In this document: positions 1,088 to 61,226 of the stretch, piece by piece
Position numbering within the stretch: position 1 is the first letter of the stretch
Layout of the letters: each line of letters starts with the position of its first letter
Origin: Antechinus flavipes
Lineage: Eukaryota
Assembly: GCF_016432865.1 (NCBI RefSeq)
Contig: NC_067402.1
Location: 278,442,001-278,506,000, forward strand
Direction of reading: 5' to 3'
DNA length: 64,000 bases
Notes under the pieces: model-generated
What the model was told of the DNA's origin: nothing
Database searches by the model: none
What the model saw: the letters and a program-made list of their open reading frames with translations, nothing else
Translations under genes and position numbers: made by a program

Positions 1088-1888
1088 CAGATATACATAT
1101 ACATTATATATATACACACATATATATATTCCCTGTACCTCTAAGGGAAATATAACAACGACCTTATGAATGAGTACAAGTAGGGGATGATCGCTCCTTC
1201 TCCCATTCTGCCACTTATTAGGTGCTTGGGCAACCCTTGGGTCCTCAGTTTCCTTATCTGACAAGGGAGGAACTAAGACCATAGCATCACTGAGGCCCTT
1301 TCTAGCCCTAATATCCTGTCAATGCAAGAAAGTAGAAACTGCCAGAATGGCATTCATTGGACAAAAAAGTATTTTGGGCATGGAGGGGCAGAACCCCTTT
1401 TTAATTAATTGCCTTTAAAGAGGAACATTTCAAGGCTCAATCTCCTTTCCAGATTTAAATCCTAACTGCCACAAACGAAAGTTATTGAGTGTTTTCAGCA
1501 CTACATAGGCCAAGTGCCTCAATTAACAGAAGGAATCAGACCATGGGGAGGAGAACTCCTCAGGAAATACTTGACCAGAAATGGAGGGACCATTCTTTCA
1601 GGAGAACCCGAGCTTAGGCTGAAGGAGGCCCCGTTTCCCCCCCCTCCCCGCCATATTCACTTTCCTTCTGCTTGAGGGGGGACAAGGTGGGCCGCAGCCC
1701 GGCCGCTGACGCCCCTTGGGCACTTGGGTCATGGGCTGAATCAGTTTCCCTGGGTTGTACAAGAGATACGGCCGCGCCCCTGCTGGCTGCCTCCGCATTC
1801 TGAGCGTGCAAGGGAAAAGTGCCCACGCTGATCAGCCTGGGAGGGCCCGGCCAGTGGGAGGAGGAGAGCCACCCCAGGAGCCCAGAAA

Positions 1889-1902
1889 GCGCCACCTACT
1901 GG
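1889..1902 (-). promoter_or_regulatory. CTCF core motif
   Basis: Minus strand reads CCAGTAGGTGGCGC, a full match to CCASYAGRKGGCRS, within a CpG-rich patch. Confidence 0.55.
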
Positions 1903-1992
1903 CCTCCTGCGCCAACCCTAACCTCTAGGCTGCGGGATCCCTGTACCAATGGGAGGAGCTGGGAAATGCCGCCTGCCTTAGCTTTAGGGAGT

Positions 1993-2390
1993 CTAGGCCC
2001 GGAGGGGGAGGTGCCTGGGCCCGGAGGGGGAGGTGCCTGGGCCCGGAGGGGGAGGTGCTTAAGCCCGGAGGGGGAGGTGCTTGGGCCCAGAGGGGGAGGT
2101 GCTTAAGCCCGGAGGGGGAGGTGCTTGGGCCCGGAGGGAGAGGTGCTTAAGCCGGAGGGGGAGGTGCTTGGGCCCGGAGGGGGAGGTGCTTGGGCCCGGA
2201 GGGGGAGGTGCTTGGGCCCAGATTGGGAGATGCTTGGGCCCGGAGGGGGAGGTGCTTAAGCCCGGAGGGGGAGGTGCTTGGGCTCGGAGGGGGAGGTGCT
2301 TGGGCCCAGAGGGGGAGGTGCTTAAGCCCGGAGGGGGAGGTGCTTGGGCCCGGAGGGGGAGGTGCCTGAGGCCGGAGGGGGAGGCGCCCG
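1993..2390 (+). repeat. GC-rich minisatellite, 22-bp unit (TTGGGCCCGGAGGGGGAGGTGC, with TTAAG and CTGGG variants), about 18 copies
   Basis: Read directly. The 22-aa periodicity of the overlapping ORFs equals three units. Confidence 0.97.
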
Positions 2391-2639
2391 GAGGCTGTAT
2401 CCTCAGAAAGCCTCTGTCCCATACTCTCTCTCCAGCAGGGAGCGCAGCGGAGAGAGCCTAGAACGTCCCGGATCTCAGTTTTCCTTATGACCGAGTTTTC
2501 CTATCTGAGGGCCAGGGTATGTGCTGAGCGCCTTCTGGGTGCTGAGGACCTCAAGGCCCCAACATGACAGCTGCTGAAGGAGCCCTAAAGTCTCACGAGC
2601 TTTCCCAGGCGGCTCCCTGGGTGCTCACGGCTGCTGGGG

Positions 2640-2900
2640 GGCGCCACGGGGCCCAGAGCGCTGGCCTGGAGTTCAGATCCAGCCTTACTAGCAGTGGGAC
2701 TCTGGCCAGTCACTTCTCCCTCTTTGCCTCAGTTTCCTCATCTGTGAATTGGGCTCTGTCTTTGCCAAGAAAACCCCAAAGCGCGGGAATGAATGCCATT
2801 CACCACAAGTACTTTGGGGGTGGATGGGCAGGGCCCCTTTTTAATTGCCTTTAAAGGCCCCAAATGGTCACGCAGAATCAGGCACGAGTGACAAACAGCC
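2640..2900 (+). mobile_element. CORE-SINE (Mar1-like, RTE-type tail) interrupted by a 77-bp insertion
   Basis: CORE GCCTCAGTTTCCTCATCTGT; tail TTTGCCAAGAAAACCCCAAA [insert] CCCCAAATGGTCACG. Confidence 0.75.
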
Positions 2901-4385
2901 CAAGGACAATGTGGCCCTCACAATGACCCCAGGGGTAAGTGCTCTTAGTATCCCCATTCTACACCTGAGGAAACTGAGGCAGGCAGCAGGTGAGTGACTC
3001 AGGGAACACGGCTGGCTAGGAACATTCAAAGCCAGACGCAGTCTCAGCCTCGGTCGGCTGGCTTAAAGATGGACAGTAACAAGATTCCACCAAGGCGGGT
3101 ATATGGGGTTAAAGAGGGGTGCCCTGAAGGCCTGGGGCTGCCTGTAACTGCACAAGTTGGAGGCCGGGGCTCCAGGAAGTGATGGGATCCGTGGAGGGCC
3201 CTGAGCAGCCCCACAAGCCTCCTGGCCCTGGATTCCCCAGGGGGTCAGTACCTCTCCAAGGGAGGCCAGCCCTGAGTCTCAGAGAACTGGACGGTCACAG
3301 GGAGACCACGGCTCCCTTCCCTCCCGTCCTCCCCCCCCCCCACTCCTTGAGAGTGTCTAAGGCTGACACTCTCAGCTCCACTGAAGATGAGGACTTTTCC
3401 CCAGAGCGTCAGAGACCCCAGCATGAACCTGGGCCCCATCTCTGCTCAGCACCCTAGTCCTGCCTCAGGCCCTCTCTAAGGCCGCTCTGAGGTCTAGATC
3501 CCACGACCCCATTTACAGTCAAATGCTTTGCCAAGAAATACTTTGAACACCAAAAGACAAAGCCAAACCATGACCCAATAAACCTACAGAAAAACCGTCA
3601 AATGACAAGGCATTTATTAAGCACCTACTGAACCCAGGCACGGTGCTGGGAGCCAAACTGAGGCAAGACCAGTCCCAAAGAACTCACTGTCCAAGGGGGG
3701 GGACAAGGGGCGAACAAGCTGGGGGCAGGGGATGATGGAAAAGGACAGAATTGTACTACAAAGTCTCCAAGATCCTCCAGAACCAATCCTGAGAGGAGAT
3801 TTGCTGAAGAACTTAAAAAAGGATTACAGATGAACACCTTGGTTTGTTACTAAACTAAACGACTCACCACCGTAAGTTAGTTCCTGCAGAGTTTGCAGTT
3901 TCCACCTAAGACTCGGAGAACAGCTGAGAAGAATGTGAGCTCAATTTGCAGCAAGATGTCATTTGGGGTCCCTGGCATGTGATTACTCCTGGTGACCTCT
4001 CTGAGCCTCTGTTTCCCCTTTTATAAAATAGGAGTCACAATACTAATACATTTTTTATTTTAAATGTTTTGTTTTCTGTTCAGTTCCAAATTATCTCCTT
4101 CCTGCCACCAATTTTCCCCACTTACTGAGAAGGCAAGAGACACCCCCAAAGACACCAAAGGAAAAGAAAAAGATCCCATTAGCACAAAATTATCTATAGG
4201 AACTCTCTTTGAGGTAGCAAAGCTTTGGAAACTTGGAGATGTCCATCACCTGGCACAGCATTTAATCAGGTTAATAAATCATTTTACTTAGAGCAACAAA
4301 AGCTAATTTTACAAGTAACTAGCATAGGAATGATATTATAATTATTATTGTCACACATCTTTATCCTATTTTTAAGACTACTTAC

Positions 4386-4532
4386 CAAGGCAGGCGTAAA
4401 GACCCTGACTTATCCAGGCTAATATGGCCAGAGTAATGAGGTCCCCAAAACTAGCAGCAATCGGAGTGGCCACATTGTCCGGGTTGATACCAGTCTTCTT
4501 CGAGCCAACGATGACGCCAACCATTATTATCC
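4386..4532 (-). CDS. SLC41A2: SLC41A2 coding exon 5 (147 nt, [49 protein letters not shown])
   Basis: Acceptor TTTCTTTTAG|GG, donor CTTG|GTAAGT, phase 1-1. Contains the MgtE-family [16 protein letters not shown] motif. Confidence 0.98.
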
Positions 4533-8797: not shown

Positions 8798-8865
<68 letters not shown>

Positions 8866-9112
8866 CATCTGTCTGTCTCTGTCTCTTTCTATCTCTTTGT
8901 CTGTCTCTCTCTGGATCTCTCTGTCTTTCTCTTTGGATCCTTTTGTTTCCTCTGTTTCTCTCTGGATTGCTCTCTCTTCTCTCTCTCTCTGGATCTCTGT
9001 CTCTCTCTCTCTGTCTTTGTCTCTCTATCTCTATCTCTCTCTGGATCTGTATGTGTGTGTCTGTGTCTGTCTGTCTGTTTCTCTTTCTGGAGCTCTGTCT
9101 CTCTCTGGATCT

Positions 9113-9165
<53 letters not shown>

Positions 9166-9505
9166 TTTCTATCTCTTTGTCTCTATCTCTTTCTATCTCT
9201 GTCTCTCTCTTTGTCTAGCTGTCTCAGGATCTCTCTGTCTTTCTCTTTGGATCCTTTTGTTTCTCTCTCTTTAGTTCCCTCTCTCTCTCGCTCTCTGGAT
9301 CGCTCTCTCTGGATCTGTCTCTCTCTCTCTCTCTCCTTCTCTCTGTCTTTGTCTCTTTATCTCTGTCTCTCTTTGGATCTCTTTCTGTGTGTGTGTGTCT
9401 GTCTGCCTCTCTCTTTGGAGCTCTGTCTCTCTCTGGATTTCTCTGTGTCTCTATCTCTTTCTGTCTCTCTCTCTCTATTTCTGATTCTGTCTGTCTTATT
9501 TCTGA

Positions 9506-9552
<47 letters not shown>

Positions 9553-17559: not shown

Positions 17560-18730
17560 TTGAAAGTCCAAGGCCTGGAAGGTCCTGAAGTCTGAAGCAC
17601 ACTCTGAGCCTAGTAGATCCAGGGAAACCAGTAAAGAAATACTACAATAAGTGGAAGACAGGCAGCAATCAATGAGCATTTTTGAAGGGCCTGAATTTGA
17701 TCAGGTATAGGGCTAAGTTTTAGAAACTAAGCCAGCACAAGAGCTCAGCAAATCAACAAAAGACCCAAACAGGGCTTACCCACCCCACCCAGGAGTACAA
17801 GAGTGAAGTTCTGCCCTAGGCAAAATCTCAAACAAAGAAATGGACCTGAAAACATGAGTATCAGAAAAGGGTACCAACTACCATGAAGACATATCATGGA
17901 TCCAGGGATACATAAGGGATGAACCCAGAAAAAGAAAGTAATTCCCTAACAGCCACATGACCAGAACTTCAAGGCAAAAGTTGACTTGGCCACAAGGACT
18001 ATCAAAGTATCTGGAAGAAATTAAGCAATAAAAAATGAAATTATCGGTGAAAGAAGAGGTTTAGATAAAAGGGAATGAATGAATAGCTTAGAATAATAGC
18101 TAGAGAATTTTATCCAAGTAAAAGACTAAAAATTGGAGTATACCAAACATTTCAATGACTACATGAAAAAAATTATTAGAGCAAAATCAAAAAGTAGACA
18201 AAAATATTAGAAAATATATAGTTATTGTAACCTATTTAACATGTAAAGGACTGCTTGCCATCTGGGGGAGGGGGTGGAGGGAGGGAGGGGAAAAATCGGA
18301 ACAGAAGTGAGTACAAGGGATAATGTTGTAAAAAATTATCCTGGCATGGTTCTGTCAATAAAAAGTTATTTAAAAAATTACTTAAAAAGAAAAAGAAAAT
18401 ATATAGTTATTTACTTTCAAAAACAACTGAAGTTGTCAGAAAGTAGATCAAATAGAAAAAAATCTAAGAACATACTCTCTGAAAACCATAACCAAAAAAG
18501 CATGCCATCCAAAATATAATAAACAAAAACTGTCCAATTCTATTAGAAGTAGAAGGCAAAGTAAAAATAGGAATCCACCAATGATTTTTTGAAAGAAACT
18601 CCAAAATGAAAACTCCCAGGAAGATGCCAGCCAAAAACCAATGCTTCCAAATCAAAGAAAAAATATTGTTCACAGCCAGAAAAGAGTTCAAGAACCCAGG
18701 AGTCAGTCAATATCACACAAAATTTGGGAG
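17560..18730 (+). mobile_element. Degraded L1 5' UTR/ORF1 region
   Basis: KTPRKMPAKNQCFQIKEKILFTARKEFK resembles L1 ORF1p. Confidence 0.7.
18227..18393 (+). mobile_element. Young 5'-truncated L1 3' end with 18-bp TSD
   Basis: Perfect TSD AGAAAATATATAGTTATT at 18209-18226 and 18394-18411; AATAAA followed by an A-rich tail. Confidence 0.92.
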
Positions 18731-19445
18731 GGAGAGAAAGAGAGAGAGGAAGGAAGGGAGGAAGGAAGGAAAGAAGGAAGAAAGGAAATTTAGGAACATG
18801 GTATTCCAAAATATAAATTTATCTTATATACAAAAATATATTACAAGTAAAACTGAATATAGTTCAACTGGCTCCTTCTCATATTCCTCTTGTCTTTAAG
18901 GGACCTTCATTAAACTCTACCATCCATTCAAGCTATCCTCCTATTTCCTTTTTTCTACTCCTTGTCAGCTAAACTGCCTGAAAAAGCTGTGTGCTTTCAC
19001 TGATCTCAGCAAACCCTCAGCCTTTTTGCAGATCAGCTTCTGATTGCTCTCTCCAGAATGGCCAATGATCTCTTAAATGCTAAATCTGAATGCCCATCCA
19101 CTGCTTCTGACATTAACCATCTTCTCCTTCTTGAGACTCTCACCTCACTGAATTCTCCTGGAATTACACTTTCTGATTTTTCTCCTTTCTGTCTGGTCAC
19201 CCTTTCAGTTCCTGCCTCCTCAGGTATAACAAACCCCCACCTCTGGATGTTCTTCCAAATCCAGCCCTAGGCCTTCTTTTCTGACTAAGGAGACTGGAAA
19301 GATAGGTTGGAGCTAAGTTTGTAGGATTTTAAAAGTCAAATAGAAGACTTCATTTTTTTTATTCTAACGGTAATAGGAAACCACTAGTTTTGATTGAGCA
19401 GAGGCATGACATAGTCAGATCAGTATTTAAGAAAATTAAATGTTG

Positions 19446-19607
19446 ATATTTAACATGTATAGGACTGCTTGCCATCTGGAGGAGGGGGTGGAGGGAGGGA
19501 GGGGAAAAGTGGGAACAGAAGTGAGTGCAAGGGATAATACTGTAAAAAAATTACCCAGGCATGGGCTCTGTCAATAAAAAGTTATAATTATGAAAAAAAA
19601 AGAAAGA
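19446..19607 (+). mobile_element. Young 5'-truncated L1 3' end with 17-bp TSD
   Basis: Perfect TSD AAGAAAATTAAATGTTG at 19429-19445 and 19608-19624; same subfamily as 18227-18393. Confidence 0.92.
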
Positions 19608-20091
19608 AAGAAAATTAAATGTTGGTTGGAGGAACAGGAAATTTGGAGATCAATTAAGAGGTTATTGAAAAAGATGAGAGATGATGAGCTCTCAAACTAA
19701 AGTGGGAGCTATGTGAGTGGAGGAAGAGGGCTGAATGCAAAAGATGTTATAAAGGTAGGAATGGCAAGATTTGGCCAGTGATGAGATGTGTGTAATGAAG
19801 GAGACTGAGGAGTCCAGAATAATAACAAGATTAAGCACCTGGCAGGATGGTAGTGCCTTGGAAAGAAGGGAGAATTTTGGGGGAAAGATAACGAGTTTAA
19901 TTGTTTACATGTTGAGTTTGAAATGTCTCTTGGATATTCTGTTTGAAAATTTAAATTTGTTTATACACACACACACATGTCTATAAATCAAGGTGTAATA
20001 GATTTATAATTTCATATATGATTTTCTCTAGAAATGTTTATATTTATAGAAGATTTTCAAGTTCAGAAAACAATAAAAATTATTCTATAAC

Positions 20092-20738
20092 TGTTATGGG
20101 CCAGAACTCTGAACTTGAAACAAAGGATTTTTACAAGGTGCTAAGTCAATGGAACTGATAGAGACAATAATTATCTAATTTAGCATGGTTCAGTATGATT
20201 GATTTAATCCTACGAGGAGATGCTATGGGCCAGAACTTGAAACAAGGTACTAAGTGGAATTGAGGAGACAACGGTTAAATCTAGTTTAGCATTGATTTAA
20301 TCCTACAACAAATAATGGTTTCCTAGTGATATAATGATTGGTGTATACTCAGTGTGGAGCATATAAGCGAGAAGCTCTCAGGGCCAGAAAGGACAAGTGC
20401 ACTAAAAGTTCTCAGAGGCTGAGATAGATTCACTCCATCTTCCACCTTTGTAGTGGCTGGAGGCTGAAAACCTTTGGATTCAGAGACATTCAGAGAGATT
20501 CAGAGGGCACAGAAGGAAGCAGGAGCTCAAGCCCCGGGAACCAAGGAGAAAGATAGGACTCAAAGAAAGCTAACCAGGCTCCAGGAAAGGAGACAAGACT
20601 TTGAAAAAGACAATCGAGGATTTGGACTTTAACACATGGCTATACTTGTGGTGATTACTAAACTGAACAGAAGGCTGCTCCCAGAGAACCCCAAGAAAAC
20701 CTCAACAGAGAACATTACATTTTAGAGAAAATATTACA
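20092..20738 (+). mobile_element. ERV LTR (same family as 28450-28883) with duplicated U3 start
   Basis: TG...CA termini (TGTTATGGGCCAGAAC...ATATTACA); near-TSD TATAAC/TAAAAC; second LTR start at 20221. Confidence 0.88.
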
Positions 20739-23700
20739 TAAAACATCAATTTTGAATAAAATGGCCAGAAAAGACTGCTTTCCATATGTATCCTTTCCTG
20801 TTTAGATTACTGAGAATACCCAGGGATGAAAAAGTAGAGAATTTTCCATTTTGTGTTTCCAGCTACTTTGAGTGGCTCCCATTTCTCTTTTTCTCTAGCT
20901 CAGATGCTCTTCAGTCATCAGACAAGTTATGAAAATCTGGATGAAATGAAAAATAGGTCAGGAAGCTTGACTAGTGCTAAAGACTGTGTACTGTCTTGTT
21001 TACACTATACTTCTGTGGTTCTAGAAATCAACAGGGAATCAAAAGCCAGGTGGATATGGCTAAAAAGCCTGCTGTGTACTCAGGAAATCCATGATTTTGT
21101 CACAGTGGGTAGCCATTCCTCTATGCCTGAGGGGTGAATTGCTATAGTTGAAAAAAAAAATCCTCACCTGATGGGTGAATCCTTTGTTAATGAGGCTTCC
21201 AGAATGGAGTCAGGCTAGATCTTAGATAAAAGACATTCTAATCAATCAATTATGGGGCCCACACTCAAGACCTTTGCATCAAGGACCTGCTAAAGTTTAC
21301 ACTCTTCTAGCAAAGCAATGACAAACTCTGGGTCATATCCATTTCACTAAGAAGCATCAGAGCAGGGTTTTAGTGGAGGTTGGATGATATAATAACAAAA
21401 ATACATTTGGGCAAAAAGCTTTCAAACTGTTAAAAAGTGAAGACAAATTCATCCTTAGTCAGCTTTAAGGCATTCACTCAATTTATCCCATTTGGAGTAA
21501 GTCCTCTTTTACTGGAGTAATTCTCTTTTGAATTGGATCAGCGTCTTTAGCCTACCATCTGGTGATCTCAACAGCAGCTGGACAGTGCTCAAGAATGTTG
21601 TTTTCAGAAATATTTGTTCTGAGGTATATTGGGTTTCCTAGCAAAGTTAACAGGTTGCCTAAATGTTTGTGTATTTAATTGTATTTATCAGAGCAAAGTT
21701 CACTTTCAACCCATACAAAATTGAAGCCCTATTCTCCTCAACATCCTGCTCCATTTTTACCTATTTGCTAAAAGTGCAATTCATACTGTTCCCTCCTGCT
21801 AGAAAACTCTCCTCCTGAATTTTAAGTTCATTTTGAATTTTTCCTCCAATGGCCAATTCTTTATACTAATATATTCCATGAGAATTTTACTGGTCCTGTT
21901 TCTGCAGGTAACAATTAAAGCTAAACAGCTTCTGTATTTCTCATTAGTAATAAGAAGCTTAACTCAGACATAGCTACATGACAGTATTTCAGATGAAGGG
22001 AGTAGGAGATCATTGTTATATTTTCCTGTCTTCTAATGAAAAGGCAATTTATATCTTTCCAAGTAAGTACTCTTTGAAATCATATTTTTAACTAGGACAC
22101 ATTGACTCACAATTCACATGACAAAAGGTAAAGAGCCCTAAGATTTCCCCTACAACCACTAAACTCAATAATCAGAAAAATCAGGAAATCTTAAGAGCTG
22201 AAAGGAACCCAAAAGATCATCATTTTTTTCAGTTTCTACTTAAAACATGAGAAGGATTCTTGAATCTTTCTGAATACTAAACATGACCTTGGAAGTGGTC
22301 ATATGCAAATAGCATGCTAGATCTAAGGGGCAGGACTACATGAGGAGCAGAGAGCAGGAATAAGAGTGGAAGGTCTCTCAGGAGTCACTCAGGCCAACCT
22401 TCTCATTTAGAGAAGGGGAAACTAACACCACTGTATATTTTCAATGGCTATATTATTAGGAATTATGATGGGTGGGGGAAATAATTAGCCCATTCATCTA
22501 CTTTTTCAACAGTCACTTATTAAGAATTTAATCTGTACAAGAACTTCTATAATCTATTATGTTCCTTCATTCATTCGCAGCTCCAGAAAGACACAAAATG
22601 TTTCCTAGGAAGCTCTGATGATTCTGTAGGGACAAAAGGAAACACTCAAAAGGAAGGGCAGAGGAGAATACTAAAAAGAATACCTGGAGCTGACAAACAG
22701 GAAAGAGAGGGGGAGAAAGAGAAAAACTATGGAGAGACAGGTAATGACCAATGACAAAAGGGCAGAGAGGAAAAGAGAGAAATGAACAAATGAGAAAATC
22801 AGAAAGTGTTCTGGATACTTAAGGAATTGGGTGCATGTATAAGTGCATGTGTGCATGTGTTTGTGTAAACTAGGAGAGAAGATTCAGGATATATTATAAA
22901 AAGTCATACAATCCAAGAAACAAAAGATATCCTTAGTATCATCTTGGCCAGCCTGAATGTGAAACAGGAACACCCACCTTGCTCAGGAAGGATCACCACC
23001 TGAAGAAGTCTCCATCATTTCTAAGTGCCAGGACCAATTTTGCCCTCGAATGATGAGCAAAGAACCATTTAATTCTACTCCACAAACCCTGTGGAAGTCC
23101 TTACCACATGTGAGGTATTGGGCATTCTTTCTGTAGGTAATTTCTATAAAGAACAGGCCCTCCCAATCACTCAGGATGGCACCTGAAGGGCCTTGGCAAA
23201 TGTACTGCAGCAAGAGAGCAAATATGGAGTTGGAGAAATCGCTGAGTCTGGCTTGTTCCATTTAGATCAGTGTATGAAGGGCACCAATAGATACAAGGTA
23301 AGTACATCTACCTGGGGTAGCCTTACATGATAATTGGAGGAAGTTTAAGAGACCCCAGGGGCACCAGAACCCCTGAAGGTTTCTGATAAAGGAGTAATGG
23401 GCCATTCCTGTGCTATCACAGAGGAGCTATATAGAGGAGAAATTAGTAGCAGGAGGGAGATCAGGAAAGCAGTCCATGTGAGAGATGCTAAGGACCCTGG
23501 AGAAGACAAGGAGACTGATATGAGAAAAGTTGGGGAGATAAAATTGAAAGGAGTTGGCAGTTGATAAAATGAAGGGAGTCAGAGAGAAGAGAGAATAGAA
23601 GAGTCAATTAAATCAATCTCAGGGAATGAGATGGCGACATCTTCAACAAAATAACCCAGTTCAGTGAGGGGGCGGAGGGGACAAGATGGTTGAGATCTGA

Positions 23701-33414: not shown

Positions 33415-34520
33415 AGGGATACTAATACATTGTTGATGGAGCTGTAAAATGATCCAACCATTCTGGAGAACAACTTGGAACTCTGCCCAAAGGTCTACTG
33501 CATAATCATAATTGTACTGAAGCATTTAAGGGCTTAGGGAGGAACACAGAGCTCTGTCAGCTGCAGCGTTCTCATCCAGAGAAGACTTCAGACTTTGATC
33601 CAGCAGTGTCTCCACTAGGTCTGTATTCCAAAGAAATCATAAATCATGTGCAAAAGTTTGTAGCAGTCCTAGCAAGGAATTAAAATTGAGTGGATGCCCA
33701 TCAACTAGAGAATGAATACGTTATGGTATGTGAATGTAATATTGTTCTATAAGAAATGAGCAGGCTGACTTCAGAAAATCCTGGAAAGACTTACATAAAC
33801 TGATGCTAAACGAAGGGAGCAGAACCAAGAAAACACTGTAGACAATAACGAGATTCTGTGATGGAGTTGGCTCTTCTGCCTGTGGTGATTTAAGGCAATT
33901 GCACCAGATTTGGGATGGAAAATGTCACCTGCACCCAGTGAGAGAACTATGGAGACTCAATGTGAATTGAAGTGTCGCAGATGGAACTCTGGAAAGGTAT
34001 ACTTGAATCACAGCATGGTGCTTATGGCTGCTCATGTTCAATGTGATGCAGTGAGGTAATCGTACTGAAGGATTTAAGAGCTGAGGGAGAGACACAGAGC
34101 TCTGTCAGCTACAGCATTCTCAGTCAGATAAGACTTCAGGCTCCAGACTCCAGAGTCCAGACTCCATCTTTGACCAACCAAGTGGTGGCTCTCCTGCCTC
34201 TTTCACTTCTACATCTAAAGACCAAGGACTATGGCTGATCTTAAGGTCCTCCAGAAAGCTAGCCTGGACATTATATTCAAGAACAGTATTTTCACTTTTT
34301 GTTTGTTTTCTTTCTCTTAGTTTATTTTTTTCCCTTTTGGTTTGATTTTTCTTGCGCAATATAAAAAACATGGAAATATATTTAAAAGGATTGCACGTAT
34401 TTAACCTATATAGATTACTTGCTATCTGGTAGATAAGAAAGGGAAAGAAAAAAATTTGGAACACAAAATCTTTCAAAAATGAATGCTGAAAACTATCTAT
34501 ACATGTATTTTAAAAATAAT
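33415..34520 (+). mobile_element. L1 ORF2 end/3' UTR carrying a nested LTR and an 83-bp templated insertion
   Basis: L1 consensus resumes collinearly after each interruption (CTTTGATCCAGCAGTG at 33593; AGTATTTTCAC at ~34285). Confidence 0.88.
33973..34275 (+). mobile_element. Solo LTR (~303 bp) nested in L1
   Basis: TGTCGC...CATTATA termini; near-TSD TTGAAG/TTCAAG; 3' part resembles the other LTRs (CTCCAGAAAGCT..ACATTA). Confidence 0.7.
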
Positions 34521-36006
34521 ATTAAATTTTAAAAAACATAATATTTTAAAAATTAAAATAAAATTAGATTTAATTTTTTTAAAAATTAAACCCAGAGACA
34601 AAGACTACAGGAAGAAGGGTGAGCCAGTCAATAAGGTCAACTGCTGCAGATAGATCAACAAAGAAGAACTGAAAAACTAAGAACTGAGAAAAGAGCATTA
34701 AATTTTAATAACTAACCAATCCACTAGTAACCCTTGTAGAAAAGGTTCATTTTAATGGTGGCATCAGAAAAAAAATTTGCAAAGAGGCAAAAATATAAGT
34801 GAGATGTGGATATGGATATAGATATGGAAAGAATATGGAAACAAATGTAGACAGCTATTCCTAGGATTTGGGAAGTGAAAGCCAACAGAATTATGGGATG
34901 ATCTTTTAAGTATGTGGTTGAATCAAGTGAAGCAAATAGCCAGGAGGAAAAAAGATGGCTCAGCATCAAATATCACAGATTGGTCTCAAAAAGTTGAAGA
35001 TAGAGAAAAGGCCCCAGGACACATTTGGTGACATGAAGAATGCTCAGTGGCACTGAAAAAGAGCAGTGTCAGTAAAGTGGTGATGATGGAAGCCTCTCTA
35101 CTCCATGAGAGCACATGGCAAGAGGAGTGGTGAGGAATGAGTTAGCAGATGCAGAAAGTACCAATTACTCTGAGGTTGGGAGTGAAGAATAGAGGTAGGA
35201 TGGCAAGACTTAAAAGAAAATTCCGTATTTTCTTTTTAGGACAGAGAATGCTAATAGGCTTAGGGGAAAACTTACCCAAAAGGAAAAGAATGAAACTTCA
35301 TAAAATGAAAAATGCTCAATGGAGCAAAAGTGATTAGAAGAGATATAAAAGATTCTGAAACAAGTAACCTGCTACCTTTTTACTAATAGAAAGCAATTTT
35401 CAAATTAGTATCCACATGAGTAATATCTACTTAGTAGAAGTGAAAGTTGTGAGAAACAAGAATATAACAAAAGGCAAAAAAGTAGAGTCTGATGAAACGC
35501 AAACAGGTTCTCATTTATATTTCATAAACTGATCCTTTAAAAGGCATTTACTTAAATCAAACCAAATAAATGTGAAAGGGATAACTTTGGACTAATGTGA
35601 AAGGTGGTAGCATCAAACTTTAAAAATTTATCAACAGCAAAAAAAAAAAAAAAAAAAAACCTCAGTGCTGGTGGGGCTGTGGGAAAACAGGCAGATGCTG
35701 TTAACCAGCATTTAAAGAAGTATCTATAACCAGTTTATTCATGTTTTTGTATTCTGTTATTCATTGATGATGCTACATTACTGTTTTCATGGTCAGAATC
35801 ATGCTGGTCTTTCAGAAGTTCAAAAATTACAAAGCCTCCCTATTTTATATTTTACCAGAGCACTATTCTATTTATTTTGCAAGCCGATTGATATAATTTT
35901 AAATCTTTCAGATCATTGGCCAATAAACCCTAAACATCTTTATCTTCTGCAATAAGACAGATCTGGAAAGCAGATTAATTAAAATGCAAAAAAAATGAGC
36001 ACTCAC

Positions 36007-36540
36007 CTGTACTATGTCTAAAACCATGCCAGCTGAAACTGTTCCAAATCCTGCCAGCAGAAATGGCACCAGGATCTGTAAGGCCATCGTGCCACTGGAC
36101 TCCTTTGGCAATCTGTGATTCCCTTCCCCAATGAGATCTTCGTCACCATCACTAGACATGTCTTCATTTTTTAACATGACAGCTGTTTCTGAATTCTCCC
36201 TTCCATCACAGTAATTATAGTTAGCATAGTCATCATACTTTGGGCTACAGCTTGATGGAACATGTCCGTTATTGCCATGAAAAGATTGCTCTGAAAAATG
36301 ATGGTACTCCATGTGTTGATCTGTTCTTATGTTAAATGTCTGTGCTGAGGCTGGCAGGCCATCTTGCCAAATGCCATCTTGATTTTTATGATAAATGACA
36401 GGCACCATACTCAATAGAAAGCTTAAAAATGTGTCAGGCTGAACTGTATTTAAATGGAGAGTCCAATTTACCAATCTTTCTCCACTGTTGACTATGCCGC
36501 TGGTTCTGTTTGTGATAGCTCTTCCTTTACTATTAGTCAT
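36007..36540 (-). CDS. SLC41A2: SLC41A2 first coding exon (178 codons, [10 protein letters not shown]...[10 protein letters not shown])
   Basis: Translation matches the recalled SLC41A2 N-terminus ([62 protein letters not shown]). ATG at 36540; donor CAG|GTGAGT at 36007/36006, phase 0. Confidence 0.97.
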
Positions 36541-36703
36541 ATTGTTGTCACAATGCCCCTGTCCTTGTGCTCCGTGGGTCTCAACGTGCATGAGAAAACA
36601 GCAGGTGACTCAAATACAAACAGGGCTTTAAAGCAAAGAGCAGACAAAAGCCAATGACTTCAGTGATCTAAAATGTTTGGTAATTTCACAGACAGAATTT
36701 GAC
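36541..36703 (-). other. SLC41A2: 5' UTR portion of the first coding exon (whole exon 36007-36703)
   Basis: Strong acceptor TTTTTTCTTTTTCTTTTCCAG|GTCAAA at 36704/36703 on the minus strand. Confidence 0.8.
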
Positions 36704-37600: not shown

Positions 37601-37754
37601 NNNNNNNNNNNNNNNNNNNNNNNNNNNNNNNNNNNNNNNNNNNNNNNNNNNNNNNNNNNNNNNNNNNNNNNNNNNNNNNNNNNNNNNNNNNNNNNNNNNN
37701 NNNNNNNNNNNNNNNNNNNNNNNNNNNNNNNNNNNNNNNNNNNNNNNNNNNNNN
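37601..37754. other. Assembly gap (154 N)
   Basis: Run of N. Confidence 1.
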
Positions 37755-41454: not shown

Positions 41455-42230
41455 CAGTCAGAGAAATGATCTAGATAACATTTATCTAGATTTTGTCAAA
41501 GCATTGGACAGTCTCTCAAGTGATTCTTGTGGAGAAGCTGGAGAGATATAATTTAGATAATAGTAAGTACAGTTGGGTAAATTAGTAACTGGTTTAATAG
41601 CTGGATCCAAAATGCAGTCAATGATAAGTAGAATATCAATGACAATGTCAAGGAAAATCTATAGTGCATTCCACAAGGATGTATCCTAGGTTCTGTGNNN
41701 NNNNNNNNNNNNNNNNNNNNNNNNNNNNNNNNNNNNNNNNNNNNNNNNNNNNNNNNNNNNNNNNNNNNNNNNNNNNNNNNNNNNNNNNNNNNNNNNNNNN
41801 NNNNNNNNNNNNNNNNNNNNNNNNNNNNNNNNNNNNNTAACTCTGTACTCTGGCTTAGTCAGAACATATCTAGAATATCATGTTCAGCTTTGGACACCAT
41901 ATATTAATGGCATTGATAAAAGGCTATCCAGAAGAGGAAAAGAAAGATAAGCCATTGAGAAGACATCATATGAGAAGTCAAATCCCCTCTGCAAAAAGAG
42001 AAAGCAGGTGTAATATTTAAAAAATTATTGGTGGAGGAAGGATTAGAAAGATGTGTTTCCTTTGACCTCAAAGATCAAAACTAGGAGTAATGGGAGAATG
42101 TTTCAGATGCTTGATATAAAGAAAAAATTCCTAACAATTATTATAGTGGAACGGGAACTCTGGAGAAAGTAGATTCCCTCTCATCTCAAAGACTAGTTGA
42201 TCAACTGTTAGTGATACTGTAGAGAGGATA
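41455..42230 (+). mobile_element. L3/CR1 LINE fragment (RT and 3' region), spans a gap
   Basis: DNIYLDFVKALD resembles the CR1 RT motif YLDFSKAFD; ..CCACAAGGATGTATCCTAGG resembles PQGSVLG. Confidence 0.75.
41698..41837. other. Assembly gap (140 N)
   Basis: Run of N. Confidence 1.
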
Positions 42231-46340: not shown

Positions 46341-48261
46341 GTTGGGCTATGCTGATTTCCAGAAAACAGAGACAATCTGTCACTGAGACCAAATTCAAAA
46401 TACTGGCAACTCAGAAAAATCCTGATTTGTATTCTTCAGGCATTGGAAAAACCCAATCAGCTCCATTCCACGATAAGAAACTGGAGCAGGACTTTTGTGG
46501 ATGACCATAAAATTATCTAATACAAATATTCATTTATTTGACTTCATTTTTCTAAATGGGAATCCCTTTACTTAAAATAAATTAAAACAAATTAGCATTA
46601 ATTATGAATTTACATGTATTGAATACATTTACATGTATTCCTTATATGGGAGGAAACTGGAAGAATACTTAACTCTGGCTACTTTTAATTGCTGTATACA
46701 ATCTAGACAACACAAATAGTAAGGCTTGAGGACAAATACTGGTCCATAATCAAGTATTTATCAAGCACCTATTATGTGTCAGTACTGTGCTAGGTGCTAG
46801 ACAAATATTAAGAATGATACGGCCCCTACTTTCAATGAGTTTATATTCCAATGAGGGAGAGAAGTACATATAAAAATATAAATACAAAGAGGTTAGAAAA
46901 AGGTAAAAGTTTGGGACGGAAACCACTAGCAGATGTGGGAAGGGGAGATCAGCAAAGGCTTCGTGCAGAAGATCCTAAAGGAAAAGAGGAACTCAGTGTG
47001 GCAAAAGTAAGGAGGAAGTGCAGTCCAGACAAAGAGGATGGGCAGTATTTGAAGATGAAGCTTGGAAGTGAGGAGGAACAGAAAAAGCCAAGGTGGCTGA
47101 ATCACCGAATGAGGGAGAAAGAGTATTGTTCTTGGATGCCAGAAATACAGATTGGGGCTAAGTTGTATAGGGCTTTAAAAGCTAAGGAAGGAATCTTTCT
47201 AATTTATCTTAAAAGTAGGAAGCCAATAGAGTTGGTTGAATAAGGGAAGGGATGTGGTCAGTTCTGATTTAAGTAAAATTACTTTGGCATTATAGTATAT
47301 ACAGTATATTTAGAATGTTATTTAGTAGTATATAGTTTTATACTTAGTATATAGGATATGAATTTAGTATATTATTTAATAGCATGCTGTTATATATTTA
47401 GTGATATGTTCATTCAGTATTTTTTTTTTAGTCATATATAGACAGGATAAGGTGAAATGGTGAGAGATTTGGACCAGAGAGACCAGTTCTAGTTTTGCTG
47501 TTGCAATAATCTAGGCAAAAGGCCATGAGGGTCTGAACTAAAGTAGCAGCCAGATAAATGCAGAAAAAGGGTCAAATGCAAGAGACGCTAGGAAGGCAGA
47601 AATGGCAAGAATTGGTAATGGAGTGGATATGTGGGAGAGGGACTAGATGAATGGTGGGACTTGGGTAGAGAGCAGGAAGTTTGGAAGAAGGGAGAACTAG
47701 GTTAATGGATTCATTAATAAGATAATAAGTTCAACCATAAATATGATTCAGCTGTCTGAAACTATCCAAAGTCCAAATAATTTAATAAAAACAAAAGATA
47801 CTCAACATTTTCTAAAATCTTCATCAAAAGAAGTAACGTCACAAAATCATTAACCCTGAAAACTCTGCTTGCATGCTATATTCTAATAATTCTAATAATT
47901 AAATATATACATCCTATACCAAGCAAAACAAGTAGACAAAAGTCAAAAAAAAAACACCCATTAAAATAAAATCAACCGAACTTGGTTCTAGAAATAATAA
48001 TATTTAAATACCATATTTTACAAAGTAAGATTAAACTAAAAGATTCACCAACTATCTTATCCATACAATTAGAATACAAAGTATTTTTTACTTTAAAGTT
48101 ATTTTTTACTTTAAACTAAAGTTAAAGATGATTATACCAAATTTCAAATTTGTAATTTTTGTGATTGAATTAAGGAAAGTGAAGAAGCATTTGAGAAAGA
48201 AAGAAATGCAGCATGCATCTAAAATTAAGTGATTTTTCTTAGCATACTTAAAAAGTACATG

Positions 48262-48890
48262 TTATAATGAGATGATCCAAGACAATCCCAATAGACTTGG
48301 AATTCTCATCATAGCATGGAGCTGATTGGGCTTTTCCAATGCCTGAAGAATACAAATCAGGTTTATTCTGTGATGCTAGTATTTTGAATTTGGTCTCAGT
48401 GACAGATTGTGTCTCCTTTCTGGAAATCACCATATCAGAGAGAATTGTAGAGACTGAATGTGGATCGAAGCATAGTATTTTCACCTTTTTTTTTTTTTCC
48501 TTCTTCTGTTTTTTTTTCCTTTTTGGTTTGATTTTTCTTGCACAACATGACAAAGATGGAAATATGTATTTTTTAAAATTGCACACATAATCTATAAGAG
48601 ATTGCTTGCTGCCTTGGGGAGGGGAAAAGGAAGAGAAAGGAGGGAGAAAAATCTAGAACACAAAGTTTTACAAAAATGAATATTGAAAATATCTCAGGGG
48701 CAACTAGATGGCTTACCAGAGCACTGGTCCTGAAGTCAGGAAGACCTGAGTTAAAATCCAACTGTAAACACTTAACTTCAAATTTCACACCAAAAAAAAA
48801 GAAAAAAGAAAAAAGAAAGAAAAAAGGAAAAAAAAAAAACTATTTTAACATATATTTGGAAAAATAAAATACCATTGAGGGAAAAAATTC
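48262..48890 (+). mobile_element. L1 3' UTR with a 131-bp inverted templated insertion and a nested SINE (~48696-48840)
   Basis: L1 consensus is broken at CAATAGACTTG and resumes at TGGAAATCACCAT..GAGACTGAATGTGGATCG; SINE head AGGGGCAACTAGATGG. Confidence 0.88.
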
Positions 48891-55125: not shown

Positions 55126-55194
55126 CAATAGAAAGAATGATTCTAACACCAATATATTATAGACAACTGAAAGATGGGAATGAGGTAGCACATT

Positions 55195-57750: not shown

Positions 57751-58384
57751 TGAACTTCCCTCCATTCTGTACTCCTGTGCTATTTCCTCTCTTTTCCCCA
57801 ACTCCCTTATTCTTATTATAAATAAGAAATGTGTGTGTATGTGTGTGTGTGTATGCGTGCGTGTAATACTGGTGATATATAAAGTGAAAATCTATTTCTG
57901 CTCCATTACCCATCTTGTCTTTTTCCTGCTCTGCACCTGATTCTATTTTTTAATTCTTTTTTTCCTTTTAATCTCCCCTTAATCTATTTCCTCTCTAATT
58001 GTAGACTGTTTTGTTTTCAATTATTCCCTTACTTATTCTCATAACCTTCTCTCTCTCCCTTCTCTCTCCATCTTTTCCCTCATCTTTTTCTACTTCCCGT
58101 TTGAGGTTAATATAATTCTATACTGTGATTTTTGTATGTGTGCTGGGAGGCCCTATTTCTTCTAATACTCTGCTCTTCCCTTCTACTTCTACTTCCCTTT
58201 AGAGATTAATGTATTTCTGTACTGTGGTTTTTGTACATGTGCTGGGGGGCAGTGAGAGAGTAATTTGCATTCAACCTTCCTCTCTATGGTTCAGATCAAA
58301 GTAAGATTCATCCGAGTGCCTCTGCCTCTTTAGAATTCCATTCCTGAAGGCTTTCTATTTCTCCTGTGCAAACTTTTTCAGCTG

Positions 58385-58856
58385 AATTTCAGGCCATCAG
58401 TTCTGATGTTCTCGTGATGAAGAAAGCCATCTGCACCCAGAGAGAGGACTGTGGGAACTGAGTGTGGACCACAACATAGCATTTTTACTCTTTTTGTTGT
58501 TGTTTGCTTGCATTTTGTTTTCTTTCTCTTTTTTCCTTTTTTGATCTGATTTTTCTTATGCAGCACAATAATTGTAGAAATATGTATACAAGAATTGTGC
58601 ATGTTTAACATATATTGGATTACTTGCCATCTAGGGAGGGGGTCGGGTGAAGGGAAGGAATTTGGAACACAAGGTTTTGCAAGGGTCAATGTTGAAAAAT
58701 TATCCATGTATATGTTTTGAAAATAAAAAGTCTTAGGGGCAGTGGATAGAGCACCAGTCCTGAAGTCAGGAGGACCTGAGTTCAAATCTGGCCTCAGACA
58801 TTTAATACTTCCTAGTTGTAAGATCCTGGACAAGTCCCAATTGTCTCAGGAAAAAA

Positions 58857-58888
<32 letters not shown>

Positions 58889-59135
58889 GAAGAAAGAAGA
58901 AAAAGAGCCAAACCAAACCTCAGGATCATTGATTTAAACCTGAAGAGAACCTCCAAAGCCATCTCTTGAGACCAACTTCCCTCACTTTACAACTGGGGAA
59001 ATTGAGGCACCAAGTGGAAGAGTGATGCCCCCCCCCCCCGACCCCGGCGGGATGACTGACAGCAGAAACAAGAAAGAAAAAGAAAGAAGAAAAAGAAAAA
59101 AACAAAGAAAAGAAAAGATAAAGCTTTAATTAAAA
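58385..59135 (+). mobile_element. L1 3' end interrupted by a SINE (~58733-58900) plus a captured 170-bp segment
   Basis: L1 terminus AAAATAAAAAG.CTT is split and resumes as ATAAAGCTTTAATTAAAAA at ~59118. Confidence 0.85.
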
Positions 59136-59635
59136 ATTTAGAAAAAGAATTTCAGAGCATGAAATCCTGCTTCTCCTTCTCTAAATTGTTTGGAAATCTG
59201 CTCCCTTGAAACCTAATAAGCATATCAGCCTAAGTCCAGCTTTAGCCTCCCTCTCTAAAAAAAATTCTAAGCTAGAACAGTCACATCGAGGTTCCCATCA
59301 TTTATATCCCTGCAATGACTTCCTCCTTGTTCAGGAAACTCGGGTCCAGAATTAGGTTTGTCTCCCCAGAGTCTTTCATTTCTCGTACCCCCAGCACAGT
59401 GCCTGCAGAGAGATGCATTTGGCTGATATTCACTGGCTGAGATAAAACTGCTTCAGTACTTTAAAGTATGATTGGAGGGGTTATGGGGCCTCTCTCCCCA
59501 CAATGATGCAAACCACAAGATTTCTAAGAGAGTCAATGAGCTTCGAGAGCTGCTGTCACCAAAGAAATTATCCACCAGGCTGACTTGTAGGTCAATGAGC
59601 CTTTCAGAACTCAGGGTGATAGAGAACAGACTCAC

Positions 59636-59701
59636 CTTCCATAGTTGTATGAAGTGATGCAAAGAAATTAAGCAAAACCAAGGAAACAATTTACAAAATG
59701 A
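59636..59701 (-). other. Candidate 66-nt 5' UTR cassette exon
   Basis: Polypyrimidine tract CTTCCCCTTTCTTTTTCCTTTATGTTATTTTAG, upstream TTAAT branch-like motif, and a consensus donor AAG|GTGAGT. No transcript evidence available. Confidence 0.3.
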
Positions 59702-61226
59702 CTAAAATAACATAAAGGAAAAAGAAAGGGGAAGGTACAAGTATTATTAATCACCTGCTATGGGGTAAGTAAACATTGTGCAGATATTATCTCATTTCAA
59801 AATAGCACTGAAAGACAGCAGAATGCTAGCTAATCACTCCTTCAGACCGACAAGGACACGCGTGCCCTCCCCCTCTCAGTATGGAGGAATGAGGAAGACA
59901 CTGTCAGATAGGGCTAATCTGTTGACTGATCTTTTTTTATCGGACCACAAAGGACTGGTGTGTATTTTAGGGAGGGAGGAGCTGTTGAGAAGTAAAAAGG
60001 ATGTTTTTTAAAAGCCTCAATAAAGCACATTTAAAAAACAAAACTAATCCTAATCCAAATATACCACGTTCTATCTGGAAAAAAAATTAAAAGTGTGTTT
60101 TGGTCAAGTCATCGAACGCTCTTAAACGTGCACACTTCCACTGGCAGCCCTCAAAAACAATGCGGACTAGGGGCGGGGGACACTCATGGTGCTGTAGGAG
60201 AATCGAAGTTGGAGTTTTACTCTCTGGGACTAAATGCCAACTCTGGCTACTTCCTAGTCAGGTGAGCTCAGACATGCCCCTAAGCCACTAGGCCTCAGTC
60301 TCCCTAAGTGTAGAATGAGGGCTTGTTCTAGACAATCAATAAGCCTCCCCCCCAGCTACAAATTCTATGATTCTATTTCATAAAATAACAATTCTTAAGA
60401 TGATTCTATTGACATTCCAATTTATTTAACTTCCACAAAAAAGTGATATTGGCCTCCAGACAACATAAAAACCTGGATTTAAGCCTAAATATTGGAAAAT
60501 GATCACAGCGTATCAGGGAAATTGAATTTTGTTCTGGTTTCGGTAATAATGGAGTATTTGAAATTTCTATTTTTACTCCATTATAGTCAGCATGGCTCCA
60601 TGGCACTACACACTATTTCCTGACCACAAGACCACAGATTTGTAGATCTGGGTGGTATCTCAGAGGTCCCCCAACTCCACGTTTTTCATTTTACAAATGA
60701 AGATACCCGGGCTCAAAAGCTTTCAGTGATTAATCCCAGGTCACACAGGTATAAAGTGGCAGTGCTGAGAGCCAAACCAAACCCCAGAGTCACTGATTTA
60801 AACCTGGAGAGAACCTCCACATCCATCTCCTGAGACCAACTTCCCTCACTTTACAGTTGGGGAAACTGAGGCACCAAGTGGAAGAGCAATACCCCCCCCC
60901 AGGCGGGATGATTGACAGCAGAAACAAGACTCCATCATGAGTCCCCTTATTCTCAGGCTTCTCCTTGTGACGTTTGGTCCAGCCCAGATGCCCCTTCTCC
61001 TGACCCAGCTCACTTTCTGCACAGTGGCCCCAGCCCTCGGCAAAACCATGTTTTGAGAAAAATACTTTTTGTCCCTTACTCTCCAACTCTTATATTGCAA
61101 TCTCATGAAGTCATGGTTACTGTAATTCCATAATCATTTCCTGGACAACAAATCGGCATTATTAAATTCTTATTTGTAAGCTATATGGAGTAGACAGCAT
61201 GGGGTAGGTACCATGGAAAGAATAAT

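What the first reader, a model, noticed from the sequence alone, without database searches (positions are those of the whole stretch)
1345..60929. Recurrent local templated insertions: four 75-170 bp copies of nearby DNA pasted into retroelements within 64 kb
Seen in sequence: four donor/copy pairs, 1345-1420 to 2781-2857, 34057-34139 to 33509-33591, 46349-46479 to 48303-48433 (inverted) and 60768-60929 to 58904-59073. Each copy interrupts an otherwise collinear SINE or L1, each donor is 0.55-1.95 kb away, and three pairs are ~87-90% identical by hand alignment. Established knowledge: polymerase theta end joining and abortive synthesis-dependent repair leave templated inserts, usually short and copied from very near the break. 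Inference: this lineage, or this locus, may have had frequent break repair that copies ~100 bp from kb-distant neighbouring DNA, at roughly similar ages. Caveat: inserts are easiest to spot inside repeats, so this count is subject to ascertainment bias.
Basis: partly seen in the sequence, partly recalled or inferred. Interest (0 to 1): 0.8.

Follow-up and report, generated by a model that had tools for sequence, protein, structure and literature searches.

The report
Local repair duplications inside marsupial retroelements
Four short pieces of DNA (77-170 bases) were each copied from a spot 0.5-2 kb away and pasted into an older L1 or SINE; this kind of break-repair scar is already described in placental genomes, and only its density here (four in 64 kb) is unusual.

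Summary
All four donor/copy pairs exist at the stated coordinates. Ungapped identity is 88% for the pair 1 core (81% over 62 nt), 86.7% for pair 2, 89.3% for pair 3 and 90.1% for pair 4. Each is two-copy within the window, and paralogous elements in the window show each copy to be an insertion into an older L1 or SINE. Neither assembly gap lies between a donor and its copy.

This is a known class: the "repair-mediated duplications" of Pace et al. 2009 (PMC2671141) and the "doublets" of Thomas et al. 2004. Those are 50-619 bp long (median 147), with donors under 5 kb away (peak about 1.2 kb). They interrupt TEs, lack poly(A), and have junctions with microhomology, filler, small deletions or 4-21-nt target-site duplications. 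The junctions here fit:
- Copy 1 has a 7-bp TSD.
- Copy 4 has a 16-bp TSD.
- Copy 3 has a TGGAAA(A)T homeology.
- Copy 2 is a clean insertion.

The open point is density. Four events in 64 kb is at least 100 times the published human figure of 0.62 per Mb of TE. Earlier notes of this scan report similar insertions elsewhere in this genome.

The parts
1354..1422 (+). Donor 1. Homology is clear at 1367-1420. It lies just past the end of an old MIR-type SINE (about 1200-1325).
2781..2857 (+). Copy 1: a 77-bp insertion into the tail of a MIR-type SINE, in direct orientation, 1.44 kb downstream of its donor.
   Evidence: Four in-window paralogues of the SINE read straight through this site.
2774..2780 (+). 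Left copy of the 7-bp target-site duplication CCCCAAA flanking copy 1. The right copy is at 2858-2864.
   Evidence: The paralogues carry a single CCC(C)AAATG.
33508..33592 (+). Copy 2: an 85-bp insertion (homology 33509-33591) into the L1 ORF2 C-terminal coding region. No L1 bases were lost or gained (within 1 nt). The left junction has TAAT twice (CATAATC-ATAATTG).
34057..34139 (+). Donor 2, 548 bp downstream of copy 2 in the same L1, in direct orientation.
33975..34276 (+). 'Insert B': a roughly 300-bp insertion of unknown origin in the 3' UTR of the same L1. It contains donor 2 and is flanked by an imperfect 7-8-bp repeat (ATTGAAG / ATTCAAG). It has no other copy in the window and is not a patchwork of local pieces.
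46349..46479 (+). Donor 3, in apparently unique DNA next to what reads by eye as the end of an old SINE.
48301..48436 (-). Copy 3 (homology 48303-48433), inverted relative to the donor 1.95 kb upstream. It sits inside a 5'-truncated L1 3' fragment, about 35 bp from that fragment's 5' end. At the right junction, donor and L1 share TGGAAA(A)T..CAT at 48421-48434. Either no L1 bases were lost, or about 20 nt were replaced.
60768..60929 (+). Donor 4: runs from the 3' part of one MIR fragment into the core of a second. This composite arrangement is specific to the locus.
58904..59073 (+). Copy 4: a 170-bp insertion in direct orientation, 1.86 kb upstream of its donor, inside the GAAA-rich tail of a SINE (body 58736-58850).
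58891..58906 (+). Left copy of an exact 16-bp direct repeat, AGAAAGAAGAAAAAGA, flanking copy 4. The right copy is at 59081-59096. It is probably a target-site duplication and may extend to about 25 nt imperfectly.
   Evidence: The chance of a junction-anchored 16-mer in this low-complexity tail is about 1.4%.

Best explanation
These are four independent repair-mediated duplications.

In each case a break, or a pair of staggered nicks, occurred inside an L1 or SINE that was already in place. [quoted passage not shown] It copied 77-170 nt, was displaced, and rejoined the other end by microhomology annealing or end joining. This is synthesis-dependent strand annealing with an ectopic proximal template. 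The donor stayed intact and the copy became an insertion.

Shown:
- the homology;
- the direction (the copies are the inserted partners);
- the locality;
- the junction features;
- that the host elements are more diverged than the donor/copy pairs, which I take to mean they are older.

Inferred:
- a DNA rather than an RNA template;
- the SDSA pathway itself;
- that breaks made by the L1 endonuclease started at least the events with target-site duplications.
For: Real homology with sharp borders.

Insertion into collinear TEs, shown with in-window paralogues.

Locality. In the first self-alignment scan, three of the four two-copy matches found in 64 kb lie within 2 kb of each other. A random pair does so with p of about 0.06, so p is about 9e-4 by my own arithmetic. 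Pair 1 adds a fourth.

Junctions:
- 7-bp TSD at copy 1.
- 16-bp TSD at copy 4.
- TGGAAA(A)T homeology at the right end of copy 3.
- Clean insertion with a doubled TAAT at copy 2.
- No poly(A) on copies 1-3.

Pair 3 is inverted, which neither tandem slippage nor 3' transduction explains.

Donor 4 is a composite of two MIR fragments, so copy 4 derives from this locus and not from a family consensus.

Size, distance, orientation bias and junction types match the 824 human proximal RDs (PMC2671141).

Ages. Host TEs differ from their paralogues by 15-35%, against 10-14% between donor and copy. Two independent L1 3' fragments with TSDs differ by K2P 0.104, so an L1 subfamily was inserting at about the same time.
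Against: - No genome-wide copy number was obtained, so the requirement that a donor is found at only one other place in the genome is untested.
- No orthologous empty site was seen.
- At 10-20% divergence the exact junction bases are uncertain, so the microhomology calls are soft.
- Copy 4 sits at an A-rich site of the kind the L1 endonuclease prefers, has a TSD and ends in an A-rich stretch. Reverse transcription of a local RNA cannot be excluded there.
- Donor 2 lies in an insertion of unknown nature. If that insertion belongs to a dispersed family, the true template of copy 2 could in principle be another member.
- Replication-based template switching (FoSTeS/MMBIR) predicts the same products.
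Confidence: 0.72

Rival explanations
1. The L1 machinery copied local RNA. The L1 endonuclease nicked the target. The freed 3' end primed by microhomology on a nascent local transcript, and ORF2p reverse-transcribed 77-170 nt. This would be a short retro-copy of local RNA without a proper poly(A) tail.
For: - TSDs of 7 and 16 bp are in the L1 range.
- Copy 4 lies in a purine-rich SINE tail and is followed by AAAGAAAA before the TSD.
- At least the part of the window below 35974 is an SLC41A2 intron, so local RNA exists there.
- An L1 subfamily was inserting at about the same time.
- An earlier follow-up on another piece of this genome reached the same ambiguity (s1-189021).
- ORF2p-made breaks can capture ectopic DNA with 14-16-bp TSD-like duplications (bioRxiv 10.1101/2024.12.14.628481).
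Against: - Copies 1-3 have no A or T tract at either end.
- As I read the nick geometry, the copy 1 target does not match the TTTT/AA cleavage consensus.
- Copy 2 has no TSD, and copy 3 has none and may carry a deletion.
- None of the 39 proximal human RDs examined had poly(A), whereas distant ones often did.
- RNA templating gives no reason for a strict distance under 2 kb, unless the RNA is still tethered.
Confidence: 0.13
2. Replication-fork template switching (FoSTeS/MMBIR). A stalled or collapsed fork switched to a nearby template by microhomology, copied about 100 nt and switched back.
For: - The products are the same: short templated insertions from nearby DNA, in either orientation, with microhomology at the junctions.
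- The similar divergence of three pairs would allow one episode of replication stress.
Against: - TSDs at two of the four sites point to staggered breaks rather than fork switches.
- The four events are separate simple insertions spread over 57 kb with intact DNA between them. They are not a stitched complex rearrangement.
- Sequence alone cannot separate this model from SDSA.
Confidence: 0.1
3. The segments are members of low-copy dispersed repeat families that happen to lie near each other, or they are assembly artefacts.
For:
- Genome-wide copy number could not be measured.
Against: - Each segment has exactly one partner in 64 kb, and that partner is within 2 kb.
- The homology does not end at TE boundaries.
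- Donor 4 spans two MIR fragments.
- Divergence of 10-20% and flanking TSDs are not what an assembler produces.
- Several organisms hold the 10-kb stretch that contains pair 3.
Confidence: 0.04

Closest known systems
[quoted passage not shown]
   Same: - Insertions of at least 50 bp that interrupt TEs.
- Donor under 5 kb away (peak about 1.2 kb).
- Length 50-619 bp, median 147.
- No poly(A).
- Junctions with microhomology, filler, small deletions or 4-21-nt TSDs.
- The rate of formation tracks L1 activity.
   Different: - No marsupial was surveyed.
- Published densities are 0.62 per Mb of TE in human and 0.18-0.26 in mouse, rat, dog and cow. This window has four in 0.064 Mb.
- The requirement for a genome-unique donor was not tested here.
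[quoted passage not shown] 2004, PNAS 101:10349). Known to me from memory and from its description in PMC2671141; the paper itself is not held.
   Same: Pairs of short matches concentrated about 1 kb apart, mostly on the same strand, arising by copy-and-paste of one member to a nearby site.
   Different: Doublets were defined as exact 25-100-bp matches, so they are young. The pairs here are 77-170 bp and 10-20% diverged.
[quoted passage not shown]
   Same: Templated DNA at a repaired break, primed by microhomology. The doubled TAAT at the left junction of copy 2 resembles iterative priming.
   Different: From established knowledge, TMEJ inserts are typically a few to a few tens of nucleotides, copied from within tens of bp of the break. 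They are not 77-170 nt from 0.5-2 kb away.
Ectopic DNA captured at breaks made by L1 ORF2p, and L1 3' transduction or short retro-copies (bioRxiv 10.1101/2024.12.14.628481; Onozawa et al. 2014 templated sequence insertions, from memory)
   Same: TSD-like duplications of 7-16 bp; an A-rich target for copy 4; an L1 subfamily inserting in the same era.
   Different: There is no L1 sequence and no poly(A) within the inserts. No source L1 sits next to any donor. RNA-derived templated insertions usually come from distant loci.
FoSTeS/MMBIR templated insertions in complex rearrangements
   Same: Short segments copied from nearby DNA with microhomology, in either orientation.
   Different: Those are usually chained with copy-number changes. 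Here there are four isolated simple insertions.

Membership tests
Repair-mediated duplication (Pace et al. 2009) | An insertion of at least 50 bp that interrupts a TE which is otherwise collinear with its family | tested here: met
   Copies of 77, 85, 120-136 and 170 bp. Collinearity was shown against in-window paralogues. Copy 4 sits inside a SINE tail.
Repair-mediated duplication (Pace et al. 2009) | Donor on the same chromosome, less than 5 kb but more than 50 bp from the acceptor | tested here: met
   Distances of 1436, 548, 1954 and 1864 bp. No assembly gap lies in between.
Repair-mediated duplication (Pace et al. 2009) | The inserted sequence is found at only one other place in the genome | not testable with these tools
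Repair-mediated duplication (Pace et al. 2009) | No poly(A)/poly(T) tract of 5 or more at an end of the insert, so not a retro-copy | tested here: inconclusive
   Met for copies 1-3. Copy 4 lies in a GAAA-rich tail and is followed by AAAGAAAA, which cannot be told apart from the tail or the TSD.
Repair-mediated duplication (Pace et al. 2009) | Breakpoints with microhomology, filler, a small deletion or a TSD | tested here: met
   7-bp TSD; 16-bp TSD; 6-7-nt homeology, possibly with a deletion of about 20 nt, at copy 3; doubled TAAT at copy 2. The exact bases are blurred by 10-20% divergence.
Repair-mediated duplication (Pace et al. 2009) | An empty orthologous site in a species that branched off before the event | not testable with these tools
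   Word shares put the relatives found at no more than about 6% divergence. Donor and copy differ by 10-15%, so the events would predate those splits. No contig DNA could be laid or fetched.
L1-mediated retro-copy / 3' transduction | Poly(A) tail, a TSD, a TTTT/AA-like cleavage site and, for transduction, a source L1 directly upstream of the donor | tested here: not met
   No poly(A) on copies 1-3. TSDs at only two of the four sites. No L1 adjoins any donor. Copy 4 alone remains ambiguous.
Dispersed repeat family | Several copies with homology that ends at the element's termini, placed independently of each other | tested here: inconclusive
   Within 64 kb each segment has one partner, always under 2 kb away. 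Genome-wide counts are not available.

The most novel reading that the evidence does not exclude
The dasyurid lineage, or this SLC41A2 region, accumulated proximal repair-mediated duplications at a rate one to two orders of magnitude above that reported for placental mammals. The events would fall in a burst around K2P 0.11-0.15, coincident with the activity of an L1 subfamily. That would point to a lineage-specific bias in how germline breaks are repaired, or in how many breaks L1 makes.
Probability: 0.18. Interest if true: 0.6.

Novelty: new member of a known kind. Interest (0 to 1): 0.3.

Why it matters
The four insertions are examples of a described mutational process, so they do not change what is known about break repair.

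They matter in two smaller ways. First, Pace et al. did not survey a marsupial, and a literature search here found no marsupial RD study. These would therefore be documented cases in a new lineage. Second, the local density is at least 100 times the published human figure. If a like-for-like genome-wide count confirmed a much higher rate in dasyurids, it would give a natural system for asking why lineages differ in ectopic-template repair and how far L1 activity drives it. Pace et al. raised that question and left it open.

For annotation, such inserts break TE models and can create inverted repeats inside introns. Pair 3 is one such inverted repeat, though I could not tell whether it lies in an intron. 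Pairs 1 and 2 lie downstream of the SLC41A2 coding exon, in what appears to be its intron.

Tried and rejected
1. Reads and contigs. The look-up of sequencing runs listed 24 runs, all held as Logan contigs. So there is no copy-number or empty-site evidence.

2. Orthologous loci through the SLC41A2 exon. The exon ORF found only fragments of at most 73% identity. The one contig I tried had no DNA served. A search with a longer placental query listed only placental proteins. I abandoned this route, because the gene range would also exceed the 100-kb limit.

3. Insert B as a patchwork of local pieces. No 12-mer or longer match pattern supports this. A 22-nt resemblance of 33982-34003 to the L1 bases just left of copy 2 (1 of 400 random windows) remains unexplained.

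4. Extended homology of the flanks, which would suggest larger segmental duplications. Rejected for pairs 2 (right flank), 1 (right flank) and 4.

5. The local pair 18233-18400 / 19447-19615 as a fifth templated insertion. Rejected. Both are 5'-truncated L1 3' ends, each with its own roughly 17-bp TSD and A tail.

6. The pair at 20.2-20.8 kb / 28.4-28.9 kb. These are two inverted copies of an unidentified repeat 7.7 kb apart, with a small tandem duplication in one. It is not a templated insertion.

7. Pfam and ESM Atlas gave nothing for the ORFs I tried.

8. Thomas et al. 2004 is not held in the library.

9. The search for a marsupial RD paper found none.
Full report
**Observation**

The four donor/copy pairs are real. 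blastn of the eight segments against the window gives:

| Pair | Identity | Length | E-value |
|---|---|---|---|
| 1 | 81.5% | 54 nt | 8e-9 |
| 2 | 86.7% | 83 nt | 3e-21 |
| 3 (inverted) | 89.3% | 131 nt | 5e-39 |
| 4 | 85.9% | 170 columns | 3e-46 |

With gap columns set aside, identities are 88% for the pair 1 core (80.6% over 62 nt), then 86.7%, 89.3% and 90.1%. K2P distances are 0.13-0.23, 0.148, 0.115 and 0.108.

Start-to-start distances are 1436, 548, 1954 and 1864 bp. The two N runs, 37601-37754 and 41698-41837, lie between pairs and never between a donor and its copy. No distance or continuity claim depends on them, and I did not try to fill them.

**More than chance, and local**

Each segment has only its partner in the 64 kb. 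The one exception is a roughly 30-nt MIR core inside pair 4.

I ran a self-alignment of the whole window and filtered for matches whose two members have no further copies. At 40 nt or longer and 78% identity or better, it returned pairs 2, 3 and 4 plus one unrelated repeat pair 7.7 kb apart. A more permissive scan also recovered pair 1. It showed an excess of unique matches in the 0-2.5 kb distance bin.

Two random places in 64 kb lie within 2 kb of each other with probability about 0.06. Three of four doing so has p of about 9e-4 (my arithmetic). Even without genome-wide counts, a local copying process is needed. Independent insertion of a dispersed family does not explain the spacing.

**The copies are insertions into older retroelements**

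- *Copy 1 (2781-2857)* splits the tail of a MIR-type SINE. Four paralogues in the window (55k, 56k, 61k, 5k) read ...TTGCCAAGAAAACCCCAAATGGGGTCA... without interruption. The host has CCCCAAA on both sides of the insert, at 2774-2780 and 2858-2864, which is a 7-bp target-site duplication.
- *Copy 2 (33508-33592)* splits the C-terminal coding region of L1 ORF2. Two paralogues (43k, 17k) lack it, and no L1 base is lost. The paralogous ORF matches human ORF2p residues 1110-1222 at E 3e-23.
- *Copy 3 (48301-48436)* lies in an L1 3' UTR, about 35 bp from the 5'-truncated end of that fragment, and is absent from the other L1 3' ends aligned there. At its right end the donor and the L1 both read TGGAAA(A)T..CAT. 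So the join is either flush or replaces about 20 nt of L1, and in both readings it sits on a 6-7-nt homeology.
- *Copy 4 (58904-59073)* sits in the GAAA-rich tail of a SINE. It is flanked by an exact 16-nt repeat, AGAAAGAAGAAAAAGA (58891-58906 and 59081-59096). In an order-2 Markov simulation of that tail, a junction-anchored 16-mer arose in 1.4% of trials.

**The donors**

Donor 4 runs from the 3' part of one MIR fragment into the core of a second one. The copy therefore derives from this particular arrangement and not from a family consensus.

Donor 3 lies in DNA with no other copy in the window.

Donor 2 is the weak point. It lies inside a second insertion of about 300 bp (33975-34276) in the same L1, flanked by an imperfect 7-8-bp repeat. 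I could neither confirm nor refute that. It has no other copy in the window and is not stitched from local pieces. A 22-nt patch in it (33982-34003) resembles the L1 sequence just left of copy 2 (1 of 400 random windows), which I cannot explain.

**Ages**

The host TEs differ from their paralogues by 15-35%, and donors differ from copies by 10-15% (pair 1 perhaps more). The insertions therefore postdate their hosts.

Two independent 5'-truncated L1 3' ends at about 18.2 and 19.4 kb each have their own roughly 17-bp TSD and A tail. They differ by K2P 0.104. An L1 subfamily was inserting at about the time of pairs 2-4.

The word shares of related coded organisms (0.86, about 0.6, 0.29, 0.15) convert to roughly 0.5, 1.5, 4 and 6% divergence by share^(1/31). 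That conversion is mine and gives an upper bound. By this estimate the events would predate all the splits sampled, so I expect no empty site among those species.

**What it is**

The anatomy matches a described class. Pace, Sen, Batzer and Feschotte 2009 (PMC2671141) searched for insertions of at least 50 bp interrupting TEs whose sequence occurs at only one other place in the genome. They found 824 human cases with these properties:

- the donor lies within 5 kb, 66% within 3 kb, with a peak near 1.2 kb;
- mean length is 162 bp, median 147, maximum 619;
- none of the 39 proximal cases examined had poly(A);
- junctions carry microhomology (2-9 nt), filler, deletions (1-15 nt) or TSDs (4-21 nt).

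They attributed these to SDSA using a proximal ectopic template, and noted that the rate tracks L1 activity. They also link them to the 'doublets' of Thomas et al. 2004. That paper is not held here.

That holds for polymerase-theta inserts but not for this class.

**Mechanism and rivals**

I take SDSA-type copying of nearby DNA as most likely (0.72).

Reverse transcription of a local RNA from an L1-endonuclease nick (0.13) cannot be excluded for copy 4, which has an A-rich target, a TSD and an A-rich end. It is unlikely for copies 1-3, which have no A or T tract. Copy 2 has no TSD, and copy 3 has none and possibly a deletion. Breaks made by ORF2p can capture ectopic DNA with 14-16-bp TSD-like duplications (bioRxiv 10.1101/2024.12.14.628481). 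An L1-made break repaired from DNA is therefore compatible with my best explanation.

Replication template switching (0.10) gives the same products, and sequence cannot separate it from SDSA. Dispersed repeats or an artefact (0.04) fail on locality, TSDs and divergence.

**Density**

Human RD density is 0.62 per Mb of TE DNA, and mouse, rat, dog and cow lie at 0.18-0.26. Even if the whole window were TE, four events in 0.064 Mb is 62 per Mb. At the human rate the expectation is about 0.04 per window, so P(4 or more) is about 1e-7 (my arithmetic).

This window came to me because a reader saw the events, and the published pipeline is conservative. The excess is a lead and not a measured rate.

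Earlier notes of this scan name the genome as the yellow-footed antechinus. They list 51 notes that fit 'templated insertion' in 624 windows of it. Those are unchecked AI notes. They show that the scan has met such insertions on other DNA of this genome, and that most windows do not carry four.

**What could not be done**

Fetching orthologous loci through the SLC41A2 exon failed.

Genome-wide copy number, empty sites and cross-species density therefore remain open. They are listed as next steps.

**Verdict**

This is a new member of a known kind, and only the local density is worth a genome-wide follow-up.

Noticed in passing
window 35974-36591 (-): The open reading frame is the large first coding exon of SLC41A2. 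Hits are named solute carrier family 41 member 2 (E down to 1e-82), and the frame ends at a GT donor after ...MVLDIVQ. The window therefore lies in this gene, transcribed from the minus strand. Lower coordinates belong to the following intron.
   Followed up: partly
window 1996-2384, within a GC-rich block at about 1560-4000: A 22-bp G-rich minisatellite (GGCCCGGAGGGGGAGGTGCTTG, 17.7 copies, 88% matches) sits inside a CpG-island-like block (GC 0.47-0.58). It lies between donor 1 and copy 1.
   Followed up: no
window 33975-34276: A roughly 300-bp insertion of unknown origin in an L1 3' UTR, flanked by ATTGAAG / ATTCAAG. It contains donor 2. It also carries a 22-nt patch (33982-34003) that resembles the L1 bases just left of copy 2.
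   Followed up: partly
window 18228-18400 and 19446-19607: Two independent 5'-truncated L1 3' ends of one younger subfamily (K2P 0.104 between them). Each has an A tail and a TSD of about 17 bp; the one around the second fragment is exact (19429-19445 and 19608-19624).
   Followed up: yes
window 20150-20800 and 28380-28960: Two inverted copies (78-84% identity) of an unidentified repeat of about 450-540 bp, 7.7 kb apart. The first carries a roughly 93-bp tandem duplication marked by an exact 16-bp repeat (20198-20213, 20291-20306).
   Followed up: partly
window 8800-9552: A roughly 750-bp degenerate (TC)n-rich array, with strong negative GC and AT skew over 6-10 kb.
   Followed up: no
window 58088-58250 and 61642-61884: A 99-bp-period two-copy tandem duplication (84% identity) about 650 bp upstream of copy 4, and a 52-bp x 4.6 tandem array built from the core of a MIR-type SINE.
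   Followed up: no
The tool called it a filter that also trips by chance. It is a T-rich stretch of an L1 3' UTR. I worked beside it and sent it to no search tool afterwards.
   Followed up: no
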